From NCBI RefSeq assembly GCF_001194135.2, contig NC_069002.1:3302735-3366457 (forward strand): 63,723 nt of DNA, read 5' to 3'. Both the position numbers and the translations under genes were made by a program. Position 1 is the first letter of the stretch. Each line of letters opens with the position of its first letter. This stretch comes from Octopus bimaculoides (lineage: Eukaryota). Below the pieces are notes generated by a model. It worked only from the letters and a program-made list of their open reading frames with translations, ran no database searches and was not told the origin of the DNA. Of this stretch, positions 35,497 through 43,357 are shown in pieces.

Positions 35497-35580
35497 ATGA
35501 TAGCAGCCTGTGAAACCCAGGATTTTGTACCCTTTGGGAGGGAATATATCCATTTGCATCCCGGCAAGTTCGAAATACAG
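35497..35580 (+). CDS. ANAPC1: ANAPC1 coding exon 1
   Basis: MIAACETQDFVPFGREYIHLHP matches the APC1 N-terminus (MIAA.D.QEFVPFGR). Donor CAG|GTTATT is GT but weak. Confidence 0.8.
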
Positions 35581-37596
35581 GTTATTAAGATTTTGGCCAA
35601 CTTCCTTCTGCTTTCGTTTTTATATGAAATATTTGTGATTTAAAAAAAAAAACTTCGTATTTGTTCAGTATTTTAAAATTAGATTTGTTTACCTTTTTTT
35701 CATTATGCAACAAATAGTAAATTTTTAATTGAAGTTAACAGTGTGAAATTTTTGAATAGCTCACATGTGTGTTCCACGTTGTAATCGTTTTAGTTTCGAC
35801 ACAGATCAAATCACTTGCCTGGCTAGTACATCTCCGAAATATACATAAGCCTATATATATAATTAACACTTACTGGGTATGGTTTTCGAAGAAACAAAGC
35901 CAGAAAACCAAAGTTTTTCTTTCTTCATAAGAGAGAAAAATACTGTTGAATGAGCCAAAGTCAACATACATCAGTTAACATGCATTTTTAAAGGATAATT
36001 TATTTTCGTTATTTCACGCCGGTAAACTACATGTTAATCTTAAATCCCAGTAGCCCTGTGCACTTAAGTTGTAGTTTACTTCACCGTAGTGAATATGTTT
36101 AGCTCTCAACGAGCCGATCTAGCTAAGTATCGACTAGTGTAGGTTGCTTCACTGTTCAGTAGCCATGGTAAACATATTTAACCGTCAATAACTCGGTCCA
36201 CCTTGTTGTGGGAGCATACCTACATGAGGAAATAAAGTCGGTGGGTAGGTACCACCGTGTACCAAATTCTGGTGCGTGATTTAAGGTCTATTTAGCTGTT
36301 ACTTTTAGCATATCTCACGACTATCCCATACCCTTCTCGTTTGTCAGTCATTCTGGCGTATTGATGTTAGTGGATATCTTTCCCTCCATAAACACATTTA
36401 ATGGTCCATTGCTTGGATTTAAGCCAAAAAATTCGGACTGTCTGTATTTTAAAGTCTTGTAAATTCCCGTTTGTAAAATAGAAATTCGCAAAATTTTTCT
36501 GGAAATTCGAAATATTAAAAATATAATGAGGGTGGGGTGGGGTTATGGTGTGCTTTACGTAGAATTCCGCCGTGGTCCCTATTTACAACGTTGTATTGTG
36601 TTCAGGAATAACTCTTTTTGTAAAAATATGGCACAAAGGAACGATGGAAAAAAAACCCCAGGAAACAATCACAGGAGACGCGGACATGTTTCTCCTTGTT
36701 TAGTTATCGACCGAATATCTAAACGGTGATTGACAAAACACTCGATAATATTGTTTAGTCTGGCGATGTCAGCAACATAAGCTGCCGGTGTATGAGTTGA
36801 CATCATGCGATGGTTGTCAATGAGTACCATCGTCATGCAAGTGAGAGTATTCATTTCTAGTCTCCTGTGAAAAACGTAGCCGACTATGGGGGGTGGGGAG
36901 AATACTACCTTGGTTGGGAACGGGTAAGGATTGCAGCAAGAAGGGCACCTGGCTGTAGAATATCTTCCTTGACAAATTTCGTCTGACTCATGCAAGCATG
37001 GAAAAGTAGACGTTAAAGTGATGATGATGCAGTATAGGCTATTGAATAGTTTAGCTTGTATTCATTCGTTAAATACTGATTCTTTGACACTTGCAGGTAC
37101 AACGAAGTCATCATGCTGATCATGGATTGCCATTGCTTCGCTCGTTCCGTGACATCTCCATCAGTGAACAGAGCCCCAAAGAACAATGGTATCTACATTG
37201 CAAACCAGATTCGAACTGTGTTGGTGCAGTGGAAGAAGAGCTGTATGTGTCTGGGAATACAGTTGTCTGGAGTGTTGGCACCCGACAAGAATCTAGACGG
37301 GTCCTGAAGACCTTCACTGTAGAATCGCCAGTCATTCAAGCCATGTACTGCAGCTTCTTGCTCTCCTATAACACCGAGATTCCAGAACAAATAGATTTAG
37401 ACATTCCTGGTGAGTTGTCAATATTTTCTGAGATTTTTGTATTTGTTTTAATGAAGGCACTCATTCTTGCTCTTATTCCGGTAATTTCTAAAAGCATTCC
37501 ACGGGAAAACAAAGAATTTTTCAAAGTTTAAGACTCTGCAAACATAGAAAAGTTGGTGTTATGATGATGACGATGGTGATGGTGGTTTTCATAATG

Positions 37597-40600: not shown

Positions 40601-43357
40601 GAAGACCTTCGAGTGCAAGAGGTCCGCCACATGTTACAGTCATCTCGTCCTGTTCGTATTTCACTTCAACAGAAACCGGAAGTGAGTGACCATGAATTCA
40701 TTGAAGAACAAGAACGCTACCTGTACGCAATCTGTACAAGAACAATGGCCTTACCTGTTGGTCGAGGAATGTTTACTCTGTCTAGTTTCCATCCGTTACC
40801 TACAGAAGCCCTTCCTATCCCGAAACTATGCCTGACCGGGAAAGCTCCACCTCGCAACACCACAGTTGACCTCTCCCATATTGAAACCCCTTCCAATATG
40901 GCCACATGGCCACACTTTCACAATGGGGTCGCTGCTGGATTAAGGATTGCCAACTCATCCCAGATAAATTCCACTTGGATCAATTATAACAGACCTAAGA
41001 CTTGTGATTTCACTACAGAATATGCTGGCTTCTTGATGGCACTTGGACTAAACGGCCATTTAGCTCATCTTGCTACCCTTAACATTCACGAGTATTTGAG
41101 CAAAGGTCAAGATATGACTACTATTGGGGTCCTGTTAGGGCTGGCTGCCACAAAACGGGGGACAATGGATCAGGGTATAACAAAAGTACTCAGCATCCAT
41201 GTCCCGGCCCTTTTACCACCGACATCGACCGAACTGAATATTTCTCACAATGTCCAAGTCGCAGCTGTTTTAGGAGTTGGTCTTGTCTATCAAGGCACAA
41301 GTCATCGTCACATTGCCGAAGTACTGCTGTCCGAGATTGGACGTCCACCTGGTCCTGAAATGGAGAACTGCACCAACCGCGAGTCATACGCCACAGCTGC
41401 CGGTCTTGCCCTTGGTCTAGTCATGTTTGGTAAAGGAAGTGAAGCTGCTGGCTTGTCCGATTTAGGAATGGCAGACACTCTCTGTCACTTCATGATTGGT
41501 GGTCATAAACGGCCGGTGACGGGGCCAAATCGGGAACGTTATAGGTCGCCAAGTTACCAAATCAAGGAAGGTGACAGCGTGAATGTTGATGTCACTTCTT
41601 CTGGTGCAACACTGGCCCTCGGTATGCTTTACTTCAACACAAATAACACAGCGGTTGCCGACTGGCTGAAGGCACCAGATACTCAGTTCACCCTGGATCA
41701 CGTCCGACCGGATTTCTTAATGCTGCGTACTTTATGTCATGGATTAGTGTTGTGGGATCACGTACTTCCAACGACGACATGGATCGACAGCAATTTACCA
41801 ATAATTGTACAGAAATACGGTTTCAAACGAGAATCACACAGCAGAGATGAAGACAACATCGATTACGAAACAATGAGTCAAGCTTATTGCAATATCGTCG
41901 GTGGTGCTTGTATGGCAATGGGCTTGAAATTTGCAGGAACTGCTAATGCAGTCGCTTACCAAACTCTGCTAGATTGCATGAAGCGTTGCATGTATCTTTT
42001 ACCAGTTCCTCCATTCTGTGAACAAGCCGGTAAAAGCACTGTTGAAAACTGTACCGTTGTAGTGCTTCTTTCCCTTGCAATGGTCATGGCAGGAACTGGA
42101 GATCTCGATGTGCTCCGAATAGCCCGGGCTTTACGGAAACGTGTCGGTCCACAACATTCTTATGCCACTTATGGGTCTCACATGGCTGTGAGTATGGCTA
42201 TTGGCCTCCTCTTTCTAGGTGGTGGTAGATATTCCCTCAGTACAAAGCCAGAAGCAATTGCAGCCATGCTGTGTGCCTTCTTCCCAAAATTCCCCACTCA
42301 CAGCATTGACAACCGCTACCATCTACAAGCGTTCCGCCATTTGTATGTCTTGGCTGCTGAACCCCGAGTCTTGATACCAGAGAATGTTATTTCACGCCAG
42401 CCTTGCTATGTTCCAGTGGAAATCCGGTTTAACGACACCAAATTTTACAAAAACGTCTCTTACACTACAATGGCACCGTGTCTCATTCCAGAGCTAAACT
42501 TGTTGAAGGAGGTGAAAATCTTGGGACCTCGTTACTGGCCAATCAGATTCGATGTAGACAAAAACTGGAAAACTTTAGAGTTGCTTCTTAAAAATAGTGG
42601 TGTTGTATACGTGAAACAGAAAGCTGGACATTTGTCTTACAGTGAAGATCCTAAAGGTTACCATGGCCATTTAGCAAAGTCTTTGACAAATAATGAGTCC
42701 AGTTTTGAATCAACAAAACTTCATCCAAAATCTATAAAGTCCTTCACATCGGATGCTCGAATATTGGCCTTCTCTGAGTTTTTCCTGTTTAAAAATGAAA
42801 AAGAATGTGACAGGCTGGCCCCTGTTGTCTACAGTTGTGCCTTTAAAGAAAAACCAGAAGGGATTCCGACTCAGATGAACTTAGCCTATGAAGTCTGGCA
42901 GTCACAGATTAACAAGGCTCCTTTAGGACTTTGGCAACTGAAGATTGTCTTGAACTATTACGGCAGCAAATACCAGTTCAAAGCAAGTGAAGAAACCGAG
43001 AAAGTGCCACTTGTGGAATTGGATTATGTGTTATCTCTGAAGAATGAACTGGAAAAGTTCCTTGCTGATTGGGAAACTAACAACATGGAAATTCTGTTGA
43101 AATATTTCCAAGGAGAATCATTGAAAGATGAGCAATGTGGACACTTGTCTGCTTTCATTGTTTGGTACGACATTCCACATCCTCATGATTTAGCAAGTAT
43201 CAGTGTAAAAGGAAAGCCCACTCTTCCAGTATTGTGTAGCCAGCTTCCTCATTTACCAATGTCATCCATTATGAAGTTGCTGAATGCATGGTGCATCAAA
43301 CAGACCTACTCTGAGAAGGGCCATCTTCCTGAGTTTTCCCTTTCTGCCGATTCCTGA
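35497..43357 (+). CDS. ANAPC1: Anaphase-promoting complex subunit 1, 3 coding exons, 1942 aa
   Basis: Exons 35497-35580 (MIAACETQDFVPFGRE...), 37097-37409 (EEELYVSGNTVVWS...FTVESPV.QA), 37926-43357, total 5829 nt in frame. Hallmarks: SLPFQ-like/GLLFERS, FSMLHPL, LHLVYEELKLN, EDLRVQEVR, RTMALPVGRGMFTL, FHNGVAAGL, PC repeats, DNRYHLQAFRHLYVLAAEPR. Confidence 0.97.
37097..37409 (+). CDS. ANAPC1: ANAPC1 coding exon 2
   Basis: Acceptor cacttgcag, donor GTGAGT at 37410; phase 0 in, phase 1 out. Confidence 0.92.
37926..43357 (+). CDS. ANAPC1: ANAPC1 coding exon 3 (5432 nt, uninterrupted)
   Basis: Acceptor gcgtttcag ending 37925; stop-free to TGA at 43357. Confidence 0.97.

What the first reader, a model, noticed from the sequence alone, without database searches (positions are those of the whole stretch)
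35497..43357. ANAPC1 has lost almost all its introns: one 5.4-kb exon, only two 5'-most introns kept
Seen: a full-length, stop-free 1942-aa APC1 is encoded by exons of 84, 313 and 5432 nt. The neighbouring PM20D2, SNAPIN and T-box genes keep small exons at conserved-looking positions. Established: vertebrate ANAPC1 has several dozen exons (about 48 in human), and reverse-transcriptase-mediated intron loss, by recombination with a partial cDNA, predicts loss from the 3' end with 5' introns retained. Inference: this is either in-place gene conversion by a long cDNA or a partially processed retrogene that replaced the parental gene. Apparently young RTE LINE copies in the same window could supply the reverse transcriptase. 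This would be a striking case for an essential single-copy cell-cycle gene in a repeat-rich, intron-rich genome.
Basis: partly seen in the sequence, partly recalled or inferred. Interest (0 to 1): 0.75.

Follow-up and report, generated by a model that had tools for sequence, protein, structure and literature searches.

The report
Ancient intron loss in cephalopod ANAPC1
The octopus gene for the cell-cycle protein APC1 really is built from only three exons. However, this near-total loss of about 50 ancestral introns happened at least 240 million years ago, in the common ancestor of octopuses and cuttlefish, so it is an old, fixed example of a known process and not a recent event.

Summary
Exons 35497-35580, 37097-37409 and 37926-43357 (+) encode a stop-free 1942-aa APC1 identical to Octopus bimaculoides XP_014771835.1.

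Exact exon mapping in six outgroups (Haliotis, Lottia, Saccostrea, Capitella, Branchiostoma, a teleost) gives 42-53 introns. Fifty positions are shared by at least 3 of the 5 invertebrate outgroups, so the ancestral gene was intron-rich.

The same three-exon layout is present in genomic DNA of Argonauta hians. Exon 2 plus the single 5.4-kb last exon are present in Sepia pharaonis and a second decapodiform; a third cuttlefish contig shows only the long last exon. The loss therefore predates the octopus/cuttlefish split (at least 240 Ma).

Only one retained intron is ancestral: octopus intron 2 equals ancestral intron 3, phase 1. Ancestral introns 1 and 2 are lost. Octopus intron 1 (phase 0, aa 28|29) has no counterpart in any outgroup and is a coleoid-specific gain.

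RTE copies in the window are irrelevant to so old an event, and no intact reverse-transcriptase ORF was found. The gene is expressed and spliced in Sepia and is under strong purifying selection, and no second copy was seen.

The best mechanism is cDNA-templated intron erasure in the coleoid stem. In-place conversion and a semi-processed retrogene cannot be separated here. Nautilus could not be tested.

The parts
35244..35496 (+). Conserved 5' flank / 5' UTR of ANAPC1
   Evidence: blastn gives 76.7% identity between window 35244-35583 and Argonauta L001 9743-10087. The last ~25 nt before the ATG (ATCACACTGGCTTCGGAGGA) are also present in the Sepia pharaonis transcript L002. Promoter function is inferred, not shown.
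35497..35580 (+). Exon 1 (coding part): aa 1-28, MIAACETQDFVPFGREYIHLHPGKFEIQ
   Evidence: The ATG is at 35497 and the donor is CAG|gttatt. It aligns residue for residue with the N-termini of Lottia, Haliotis and Saccostrea APC1.
35581..37096 (+). Intron 1 (1516 nt, phase 0 between aa 28 and 29): coleoid-specific position, interpreted as an intron gain
   Evidence: It is present at the same codon boundary in Argonauta. In two Sepia-type genomes the acceptor is cttcag|GTACAA directly before V29. It is absent from Haliotis, Lottia, Saccostrea, Capitella, Branchiostoma and the teleost Chelmon. The outgroup molluscs have CAA|GTx at the homologous site, one synonymous change from a CAG|GT proto-splice site.
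37097..37409 (+). Exon 2: aa 29-132 plus the first base of codon 133. It fuses what were parts of ancestral exons 1, 2 and 3.
   Evidence: Ancestral intron 1 (phase 0, before KEQW) and intron 2 (phase 0, SPVIQ|A) fall inside this exon and are absent.
37410..37925 (+). Intron 2 (516 nt, phase 1 in codon G133): the only retained ancestral intron (ancestral intron 3). It is largely filled by a SINE-like repeat at 37630-37810.
   Evidence: It has the same alignment column and phase as intron 3 of Haliotis, Lottia and Saccostrea. It has the same phase, 1-4 columns away in a gapped linker, in Branchiostoma and Capitella. GTGAGT...TTTCAG is U2-type. No Rfam family matches it. It shows no sequence conservation with the Argonauta or Sepia introns apart from the repeat.
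37926..43357 (+). Exon 3: 5432 nt, aa 133-1942 plus the stop. It is uninterrupted coding sequence that spans 47 ancestral intron positions.
   Evidence: ORF; Pfam domains. It is collinear and uninterrupted in Argonauta L001 16929-22345, Sepia pharaonis L009 15286-20688, decapodiform L010 10046-15457 and cuttlefish contig L014. Forty-seven of the 50 shared outgroup intron positions map inside it.
43358..43660 (+). Start of the 3' UTR, with AATAAA-type signals near 43615-43645 and a TA/TG microsatellite at 43470-43565. There is no poly(A) tract or target-site duplication.
   Evidence: Read directly from the sequence. The Sepia transcript has a 1.45-kb 3' UTR ending at AATAAA. The octopus poly(A) site was not determined.

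Best explanation
ANAPC1 in Octopus bimaculoides is the single, functional orthologue of metazoan APC1.

Proposed history: the ancestral gene had about 50 introns. In the lineage leading to living coleoid cephalopods (before the octopus/cuttlefish split; possibly earlier, because Nautilus is untested), 49 of the 50 conserved introns were removed precisely. I attribute this to homologous recombination of the chromosomal gene with reverse-transcribed copies of its own RNA, that is, in-place cDNA-templated gene conversion.

Two variants would leave ancestral intron 3 (phase 1, codon 133) in place:
- one long cDNA made from an incompletely spliced transcript that still held intron 3; or
- two conversion tracts, one covering introns 4-50 and one covering introns 1-2.

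A new phase-0 intron then arose, or arose during the same repair event, between codons 28 and 29 at a CAR|GT proto-splice site.

What is shown: the gene structure, its phylogenetic distribution, the ancestral intron map, precise excision, Sepia transcript contigs matching exon 2 and exon 3, purifying selection, and no detected paralogue.

What is inferred: the reverse-transcriptase/cDNA mechanism, the in-place location, and the order of events.

My estimates: about 0.85 that the loss was cDNA-mediated and occurred in the stem of coleoids or earlier; about 0.5 that it was in place rather than through a relocated copy.
For: - **Intron-rich ancestor.** Haliotis has 49 introns, Lottia 52, Saccostrea about 53, Capitella 42, Branchiostoma 52 and the teleost Chelmon 51. 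Fifty positions are shared, with the same column and phase, by at least 3 of the 5 invertebrate outgroups.
- **Coleoid-wide architecture.** Argonauta has exons 84/310/5417 nt with introns at (28, phase 0) and (131, phase 1). Sepia pharaonis genomic L009 and a second decapodiform L010 have exon 2 starting at V29 after cttcag, ending ...CCTG|gt in phase 1, and then one uninterrupted 5.4-kb exon. A third cuttlefish genomic contig, L014, has 1.37 kb of intron followed by the whole last exon.
- **One ancestral intron retained at the exact column and phase**. A random new intron would hit one of about 50 sites among 5826 positions with a probability of about 0.9%. The template or tract was therefore not a fully spliced mRNA.
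- **Precise loss.** There is no gap within 5 residues at 32 of the 50 shared positions (31 lost, 1 retained), and the flanks are often identical, for example FLGGG|RYSLS and ALPVG|RGMFT. Forty-seven consecutive introns are gone.
- **Function.** pN/pS is 0.079/0.77 for Octopus-Argonauta and 0.113/0.79 for Octopus-Sepia. Four RNA-seq-derived Sepia contigs carry the full CDS; two were aligned to the genome. They match exon 2 and exon 3 plus a 1.45-kb 3' UTR, with the adapter directly after a short A-run downstream of AATAAA.
- **Single copy.** No other cephalopod APC1 is among the 120 best of 451 hits, and no APC1 relics lie in the window or in the fetched loci.
- **Local context is old.** The head-to-head PM20D2-like neighbour, a tRNA gene and about 250 nt of 5' flank are conserved between Octopus and Argonauta.
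Against: - A pure 3'-primed cDNA model predicts that the 5'-most introns are kept. Here ancestral introns 1 and 2 are also gone while intron 3 stays, so either a partly spliced template or more than one event is needed.
- Nothing tested here shows that the gene is still at its ancestral locus. Its immediate neighbours differ from those in Lottia (JAMP, PPPI_inhib), Capitella (ThiF) and Branchiostoma (ADP_PFK_GK).
- The outgroups share no neighbours with one another within 3 kb, and stem coleoids underwent massive chromosomal rearrangement (PMC12682272). Synteny is therefore uninformative in either direction.
- The extra intron at aa 28|29 needs its own explanation.
- Exon 1 was not found within the 8-10 kb upstream flank fetched for the Sepia loci. 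The transcript's 5' end, which contains exon 1, was not mapped to the genome. The exon 1/2 junction in decapodiforms therefore rests on the genomic acceptor before V29 plus the continuous FEIQ|VQRS reading of the transcript.
- Squids proper, Vampyroteuthis and Nautilus were not tested at the genomic level.
Confidence: 0.5

Rival explanations
1. Semi-processed retrogene replacement. A reverse-transcribed, incompletely spliced ANAPC1 RNA that still carried ancestral intron 3 inserted at a new locus next to the PM20D2-like gene in a stem coleoid. It became expressed, and the intron-rich parental gene was then lost. The intron at aa 28|29 was acquired afterwards.
For: - One template explains the loss of introns on both sides of the retained one.
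- The neighbours differ from those of all outgroups examined.
- The gene lies head-to-head with another gene. This recalls the co-opted bidirectional promoter described for amphioxus SYCP1 after retrogene replacement (PMC5803294).
- Retrogenes are known to gain 5' introns (my own knowledge).
Against: - No poly(A) relic or target-site duplication lies 3' of the gene, although none would be expected after at least 240 Myr.
- The new intron splits the original coding N-terminus and does not add a foreign 5' exon.
- This route needs promoter capture and loss of an essential parent, which is a priori rarer than in-place conversion.
- The synteny difference carries no weight, because the outgroups share no microsynteny with one another either and stem coleoid genomes were scrambled.
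Confidence: 0.3
2. Fully processed retrogene replacement. An intronless retrocopy replaced the parent and later gained two introns, one of which happens to coincide with ancestral intron 3.
For: - Near-complete intron absence over 5.8 kb of CDS.
- One of the two introns is clearly at a new position, which shows that intron gain did occur in this gene.
Against: The second intron matches an ancestral site in both column and phase in three mollusc outgroups. The chance of that for a random insertion is about 50/5826, or roughly 1%. It would be somewhat higher if proto-splice sites are reused.
Confidence: 0.07
3. Many independent losses. The introns were removed one by one or in small blocks, by separate short cDNA conversions or genomic deletions, over the long coleoid stem lineage (more than 150 Myr).
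For: - The stem lineage is long: fossil minima are about 408 Ma for the Nautilus split and 240 Ma for the coleoid crown.
- At least two tracts are needed anyway if the template was fully spliced.
Against: - Neighbouring genes kept small exons, and all six outgroups kept about 50 introns over longer times. A gene-specific rate high enough to remove 49 of 50 introns piecemeal is therefore hard to justify.
- All tested excisions are precise.
- No further loss or gain occurred during at least 240 Myr in either coleoid branch.
Confidence: 0.08
4. A recent, octopus-lineage conversion or retrogene that kept the two 5'-most ancestral introns and used reverse transcriptase from young RTE LINEs nearby.
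For: A LINE-tail-like ORF lies at 47390-47866 (-), and SINE-like copies are abundant in the window.
Against: - The same architecture is found in Argonauta and in three cuttlefish-type genomic sequences.
- Synonymous sites are saturated between these lineages.
- Ancestral introns 1 and 2 are not kept.
- No ORF of 110 aa or more in the window has a reverse-transcriptase domain, and the LINE-tail ORF has no Pfam hit.
Confidence: 0.02
5. Artefact or dead copy. The long exon is cDNA contamination or mis-assembly, or a silent processed pseudogene, and the real gene lies elsewhere.
For: None found.
Against: - Five independent genomic sequences from different projects show the long last exon flanked by intron and intergenic DNA.
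- The ORF is intact with pN/pS of about 0.1.
- Spliced transcripts exist in Sepia.
- No other copy is present in four annotated cephalopod proteomes.
- There are no N-gaps in the gene.
Confidence: 0.01

Closest known systems
Reverse-transcriptase-mediated intron loss by recombination of a gene with its own cDNA (Fink's 1987 model for yeast; experimental support from Derr, Strathern and Garfinkel 1991; 5'-biased intron retention described by Mourier and Jeffares 2003). Cited from my own knowledge.
   Same: Excision is precise, a long run of adjacent introns (47 in a row) was removed, the only surviving ancestral intron is near the 5' end (7% into the CDS), and the gene must be expressed in the germ line.
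   Different: The scale is much larger: 49 of 50 introns over 5.8 kb, in an animal whose other genes stay intron-rich. The two introns 5' of the survivor are also lost, which the simple 3'-primed model does not predict. An extra intron was gained.
Retrogene replacement / 'orphaned retrogenes', for example amphioxus SYCP1 (Garstang and Ferrier 2018, PMC5803294)
   Same: A large, ancestrally multi-exon, single-copy essential gene is now one very long coding exon plus small 5' exons. No parental copy remains. It lies head-to-head with an unrelated neighbour. The state is fixed across a whole clade.
   Different: AmphiSYCP1 has a single coding exon and a demonstrably new location beside the ParaHox cluster. 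Here one ancestral coding intron survives, and relocation could not be shown.
Semi-processed retrogenes, for example rodent preproinsulin I (Ins1), derived from a partly spliced Ins2 transcript (Soares et al. 1985). Cited from my own knowledge.
   Same: A subset of parental introns is kept at exactly the original position, while the rest are removed precisely.
   Different: Ins1 coexists with its parent and still shows a poly(A) remnant and flanking direct repeats. Here the parent is gone and no insertion hallmarks remain, which is expected at this age.
Intron gain at proto-splice sites (MAG|GT)
   Same: The coleoid-specific intron sits at Q|V. This is CAG|GT in Octopus and Sepia, and CAA|GT in the gastropod and bivalve outgroups.
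   Different: No source sequence (transposon, duplication or introner-like element) can be recognised in the 1.5-kb intron. In Argonauta the exon now starts with ATC instead of GTA.

Membership tests
APC1 / ANAPC1 orthologue (largest scaffold subunit of the anaphase-promoting complex) | Full domain set: N-terminal WD40 propeller, middle domain, PC repeats, beta-sandwich and C-terminal domain | tested here: met
   Pfam hits: PF12859, PF20518 (E = 4.5e-58), PF01851, PF21282 and PF18122.
APC1 / ANAPC1 orthologue (largest scaffold subunit of the anaphase-promoting complex) | End-to-end collinearity with metazoan APC1, and placement with molluscs in a tree | tested here: met
   The protein shows 99-100% query coverage and 42-54% identity to mollusc, annelid and vertebrate APC1. 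In a neighbour-joining tree the coleoid sequences form one clade inside Mollusca.
APC1 / ANAPC1 orthologue (largest scaffold subunit of the anaphase-promoting complex) | Single functional copy: purifying selection, expression and no paralogue | tested here: met
   pN/pS is about 0.1-0.17. Sepia RNA-seq contigs carry the full CDS and match exons 2 and 3. No second cephalopod protein is among the 120 best hits. Octopus RNA junctions were not examined.
cDNA-mediated (reverse-transcriptase) intron loss | Exact excision: no residues added or removed at former intron sites | tested here: met
   At 31 of the 49 lost positions there is no gap within 5 residues in any coleoid or intron-bearing outgroup. 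The other 18 lie in gapped, variable stretches and are uninformative.
cDNA-mediated (reverse-transcriptase) intron loss | Concerted loss of adjacent introns | tested here: met
   Forty-seven consecutive ancestral positions are absent from one exon, and the two adjacent 5' positions are absent from exon 2.
cDNA-mediated (reverse-transcriptase) intron loss | 3' bias with the 5'-most introns retained | tested here: inconclusive
   The only retained ancestral intron is number 3 of about 50, which is consistent. However, introns 1 and 2 are lost too, which the simplest model does not predict.
cDNA-mediated (reverse-transcriptase) intron loss | Gene remains at its ancestral locus | tested here: inconclusive
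   No neighbour is shared between the window and 3-kb flanks of five outgroups. The outgroups share none with each other either. Chromosome-scale synteny is not available with these tools.
Processed retrogene (retrogene replacement) | Complete absence of parental introns | tested here: not met
   Ancestral intron 3 is retained at the same column and phase.
Processed retrogene (retrogene replacement) | Poly(A) remnant and target-site duplications flanking the copy | tested here: inconclusive
   None is visible 3' of the stop codon. After at least 240 Myr none would be expected to survive.
Processed retrogene (retrogene replacement) | Parental multi-exon copy absent from the genome | tested here: met
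   Only one APC1 cluster exists for O. bimaculoides, O. sinensis, O. vulgaris and A. hians. There are no relic exons in the window or the fetched loci. A whole-genome tblastn was not possible.
Semi-processed retrogene | A subset of parental introns kept at original positions, the others precisely removed | tested here: met
Semi-processed retrogene | Insertion at a locus unrelated to the parental one | not testable with these tools
   This needs chromosome-level comparison with Nautilus and non-cephalopod molluscs.

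The most novel reading that the evidence does not exclude
ANAPC1 is one visible product of a burst of reverse-transcriptase-driven gene remodelling in the coleoid stem lineage. In this reading, a semi-processed retrocopy of an essential cell-cycle gene replaced its 50-intron parent during the same period as the ancient coleoid chromosomal rearrangement, and then acquired a brand-new coding intron. 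If so, a genome-wide scan would find a cohort of coleoid genes with the same signature: near-total, precise, clade-wide intron loss with one or two odd survivors. That cohort would date and characterise the episode.
Probability: 0.12. Interest if true: 0.7.

Novelty: new member of a known kind. Interest (0 to 1): 0.42.

Why it matters
APC1 is an essential, single-copy, 1942-residue scaffold protein whose roughly 50 intron positions are conserved from amphioxus and fish to annelids and snails. Coleoid cephalopods keep one of them.

This makes a clean, datable natural experiment in three respects:
- **It bears on how far cDNA-mediated intron erasure can go.** It reached 5.8 kb and 49 introns in an otherwise intron-rich, large-genome animal.
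- **The pattern constrains the mechanism.** Losses on both sides of one survivor, plus a new intron, are not what the textbook 3'-primed model predicts.
- **It gives a rare-genomic-change character.** Together with the aa 28|29 intron, it unites octopods and cuttlefish, and can be scored in Nautilus, Vampyroteuthis and squids.

It does not open a new kind of biology. The three-exon gene model is already in RefSeq, although my literature searches found no paper that discusses it.

Tried and rejected
- **Fragment search for squid or Nautilus DNA.** I queried Sepia aa 96-620 to find genomic ORF fragments. It returned only 8 distant, non-cephalopod proteins. The useful cuttlefish genomic loci came from cluster membership instead.
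- **Candidate Nautilus sequence.** P0007 (54% identity, Logan only) was considered as a possible Nautilus sequence. The neighbour-joining tree places it beside Mytilus.
- **Metagenome scan.** A scan with a cephalopod alignment gave three loci, none cephalopod. Two are intron-rich invertebrates and one is a 37%-identical intron-poor homologue.
- **Microsynteny.** Peptides from outgroup flanks have no hit in the window and none between outgroups. The test is uninformative.
- **A functional reason for keeping intron 2.** There is no Rfam family in either intron. There is no conserved sequence with the Argonauta or Sepia introns other than a SINE-like repeat. Splice sites are U2-type in coleoids and outgroups, so it is not a U12 intron.
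- **The CAGGT direct repeat flanking intron 1 as an insertion signature.** Rejected as evidence. It is dictated by the Q|V codons plus the splice consensus, and Argonauta has ATC at the exon start.
- **Remnant of codons 29-55 at the start of intron 1.** This would be expected if a 5'-truncated cDNA had landed downstream of the parental exon 1. No similarity was found, and none would be expected at this age.
- **dN/dS.** Synonymous sites are saturated (pS of 0.77 or more), so only pN/pS is reported.
- **Reverse-transcriptase ORFs in the window.** Twenty ORFs of 110 aa or more gave no reverse-transcriptase domain. Many of the apparent multi-frame ORFs are simply N-gaps. One call failed on stop codons.
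- **Exon 1 of Sepia.** It was not found within the 8-10 kb upstream sequence available.

Full report
**1.

- The window contains an 1815-codon ORF at 37910-43357 (+).
- Reading the sequence and joining 35497-35580, 37097-37409 and 37926-43357 gives a 5829-nt CDS with one terminal stop. Both introns have GT...AG boundaries, and the product is 1942 aa.
- Pfam recognises every APC1 domain.
- The protein is identical to Octopus bimaculoides XP_014771835.1 and about 99% identical to the O. sinensis and O. vulgaris proteins.
- The locus is on CM046622.1 of GCA_001194135.2, with a PM20D2-like Peptidase_M20 gene head-to-head upstream.
- The three-exon model is therefore already the public annotation. 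The gene region has no assembly gaps, although the rest of the window has many.

**2. The ancestral gene was intron-rich**

- I fetched the genomic loci of annotated APC1 genes and rebuilt each exon chain exactly from protein and DNA, using my own script.
- Intron counts are: Haliotis 49, Lottia 52, Saccostrea about 53, Capitella 42, Branchiostoma 52, and the teleost Chelmon 51.
- On a protein alignment, 50 positions are shared in column and phase by at least three of the five invertebrate outgroups.

**3. The loss is old and shared by coleoids**

- Argonauta hians (L001) has the same three exons, with introns at aa 28 (phase 0) and aa 131 (phase 1). It has the same upstream Peptidase_M20 gene.
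- Cluster membership of a Logan-only hit led to Sepia (Acanthosepion) pharaonis genomic DNA (L009) and to a 419-kb ENA contig of a second decapodiform (L010, 95% protein identity to Sepia).
- In both, exon 2 begins at V29 directly after cttcag and ends ...CCTG|gt in phase 1. The rest of the protein is one uninterrupted 5.4-kb exon.
- A third cuttlefish genomic contig (L014) shows 1.37 kb of intron followed by the complete last exon. It extends past the poly(A) site, so it is DNA and not mRNA.
- Two of the four RNA-seq-derived S. pharaonis contigs, which still carry Illumina adapter remnants, were aligned to this genomic locus. They match exon 2 and exon 3 plus a 1.45-kb 3' UTR, confirming the exon 2/3 junction.
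- Exon 1 of Sepia lies beyond the 8-10 kb of upstream sequence fetched. The exon 1/2 junction there rests on the transcript reading FEIQ|VQRS without interruption and on the genomic acceptor before V29.
- The Decapodiformes-Octopodiformes split has a fossil minimum of 240 Ma, and the Nautilus split about 408 Ma (PMC12682272). Saturated synonymous sites (pS 0.77-0.87) agree with deep divergence.

**4. Which introns survive**

- Octopus intron 2 (phase 1 in codon G133) falls in the same alignment column and phase as the third intron of Haliotis, Lottia and Saccostrea. In Branchiostoma and Capitella it is in the same phase, 1-4 columns away in a gapped linker. In the teleost the equivalent phase-1 intron lies about ten columns away in the same linker.
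- Ancestral intron 1 (phase 0, before KEQW, near octopus aa 56) and ancestral intron 2 (phase 0, SPVIQ|A, near aa 110) lie inside octopus exon 2 and are absent.
- Octopus intron 1 (phase 0, FEIQ|VQRS, aa 28|29) has no counterpart in any of the six outgroups. It lies 27 codons from the nearest ancestral site, which is too far for intron sliding.
- The pattern is therefore: introns 1 and 2 lost, intron 3 kept, introns 4-50 lost, and one new intron gained. All of this was in place before the coleoid crown.
- The outgroup molluscs have CAA|GTx at the gain site, one synonymous step from a CAG|GT proto-splice site.

**5. Nature of the losses**

- At 32 of the 50 shared positions (31 lost, 1 kept) there is no gap within 5 residues in coleoids or in the intron-bearing outgroups. 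The flanks are often identical.
- The remaining positions are in variable, gapped regions and say nothing.
- Precise removal of 47 adjacent introns is the signature expected from a spliced-RNA template, not from genomic deletions.
- The retention of an ancestral intron argues against a fully processed mRNA as the sole template. A chance coincidence has a probability of about 50/5826.

**6. Function and copy number**

- pN/pS is 0.079/0.77 (Octopus-Argonauta) and 0.113/0.79 (Octopus-Sepia).
- Among 451 database hits, the 120 best contain exactly one cephalopod lineage of APC1: the Octopus cluster, Argonauta, the Sepia cluster and one further decapodiform transcript cluster.
- No APC1 relics are present elsewhere in the window or in the fetched loci.
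- The second and third refutation conditions (a silent copy beside an intron-rich paralogue; an assembly artefact) are not met.

**7. Mechanism**

- *Shown:* the structure, its distribution, the ancestral intron map, precise excision, expression and selection.
- *Inferred:* cDNA-templated erasure in the coleoid stem, or earlier if Nautilus shares it. I put this at about 0.85.
- Two variants fit equally well with the intron pattern:
  - in-place gene conversion by one incompletely spliced cDNA, or by two tracts;
  - a semi-processed retrogene that replaced its parent.
- I favour the in-place variant (about 0.5 versus 0.3), for three reasons: it needs no promoter capture, it needs no loss of an essential parent, and the new intron splits the original N-terminus and does not add a foreign exon.
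- The test that would decide between them, synteny, is uninformative here. The window shares no neighbours with 3-kb flanks of five outgroups. Those outgroups share none with each other. Stem coleoids underwent a large chromosomal rearrangement while Nautilus kept the molluscan arrangement (PMC12682272).
- No insertion hallmarks remain 3' of the gene, as expected at this age.
- I found no functional reason for keeping intron 2. There is no Rfam hit, no conserved intronic sequence and no U12-type splice sites. Much of it is a SINE-like insertion.
- A general benefit of retaining or gaining a 5'-proximal intron for expression is plausible but untested.

**8. The RTE suggestion**

- The event predates the coleoid crown, so present-day repeat copies are irrelevant.
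- None of the 20 real ORFs of 110 aa or more outside the gene has a reverse-transcriptase domain.
- The only LINE-like trace I noticed is a 159-aa ORF with a typical LINE C-terminal motif.

**9. Comparison with what is known**

- The closest mechanistic models are Fink-type cDNA recombination and semi-processed retrogenes such as rodent Ins1 (both from my own knowledge).
- The closest documented case of a clade-wide outcome is amphioxus SYCP1 retrogene replacement (PMC5803294).
- Literature searches for intron loss or retrogenes in cephalopods, and for ANAPC1 intron loss, found nothing about this gene.

**10. Verdict**

- This is a real and well-supported finding, but an old and fixed one. It is a new example of a known process, with an unusual pattern of one survivor plus one gain.
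- Interest is moderate.
- The open questions are Nautilus, squid and vampire squid, and in-place versus relocated origin.

Noticed in passing
window 34455-34548 (+): A tRNA gene (Rfam RF00005, 54.4 bits) with anticodon loop CUCAU (anticodon CAU, Met-type) and an insertion of about 23 nt 3' of the anticodon that looks like a tRNA intron. It lies about 1 kb upstream of the ANAPC1 start. It is 86% conserved at the syntenic position in Argonauta (L001 4048-4191). ARAGORN in bacterial mode did not call it.
   Followed up: partly
window 37630-37810 (inside ANAPC1 intron 2), with at least 14 further copies, e.g. 44564-44714, 25795-25971, 45074-45238, 56795-56938, 63592-63721: A SINE-like repeat family of about 150-180 nt at 70-82% identity, scattered on both strands across the window. 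It is also present in the Argonauta locus. It fills about a third of the retained intron.
   Followed up: partly
window 47390-47866 (-): A 159-aa ORF ending in an ...RLRWYGHVVRM...GRPRKTW... motif typical of the C-terminal tail of non-LTR (LINE) ORF2 proteins. It has no Pfam hit. It looks like a 5'-truncated LINE copy and not an active element.
   Followed up: partly
window 12953-13315 (-): A 121-aa ORF with Tc1/Tc3-type transposase helix-turn-helix domains (HTH_Tnp_Tc3_2, E = 1.3e-06, below the gathering score). It is probably a fragment of a Tc1/mariner element.
   Followed up: partly
window 28355-28984 (-), extending to about 25497: A PM20D2-like Peptidase_M20 gene lies head-to-head with ANAPC1, with the two start codons about 6.5 kb apart. 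The arrangement is conserved in Argonauta (window 28806-28969 matches L001 1-164 at 74%). The 209-aa first-exon ORF has no Pfam hit of its own.
   Followed up: partly
window 55177-57074 (-) and 1243-6701 (+): SNAPIN exons lie at 57074-57024, 56550-56425 and 55245-55177. T-box domain exons lie at 1243-1383, 3656-3832 and 6654-6701. Both genes keep small exons, in contrast to ANAPC1.
   Followed up: partly
window 2032-2611, 4083-4260, 5406-6318, 7359-7990, 8642-8720, 10630-11013, 12261-12569, 14549-14558, 15954-16230, 18136-18304, 19761-19953, 21313-21566, 50853-50862, 52286-52807, 59715-60235: Fifteen runs of N (assembly gaps). They create spurious multi-frame 'ORFs' in a mechanical ORF list. 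None lies in the ANAPC1 gene.
   Followed up: yes
L017 (metagenome contig WNGF01125404.1) 1136-1993: An APC1 homologue from an unidentified eukaryote (about 37% identity). One uninterrupted stretch covers octopus aa 998-1255, a region that spans seven ancestral intron positions. It may be an independent intron-poor APC1 or a transcript-derived contig.
   Followed up: no
window 43470-43565: A long TA/TG microsatellite lies just downstream of the ANAPC1 stop codon, inside the presumed 3' UTR.
   Followed up: no
L002 1-22 and 7397-7421: The Logan transcript contigs of Sepia pharaonis keep Illumina adapter remnants at both ends. This is useful as proof that they come from RNA-seq libraries, but it is a caution for anyone using such contigs as clean sequence.
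   Followed up: no
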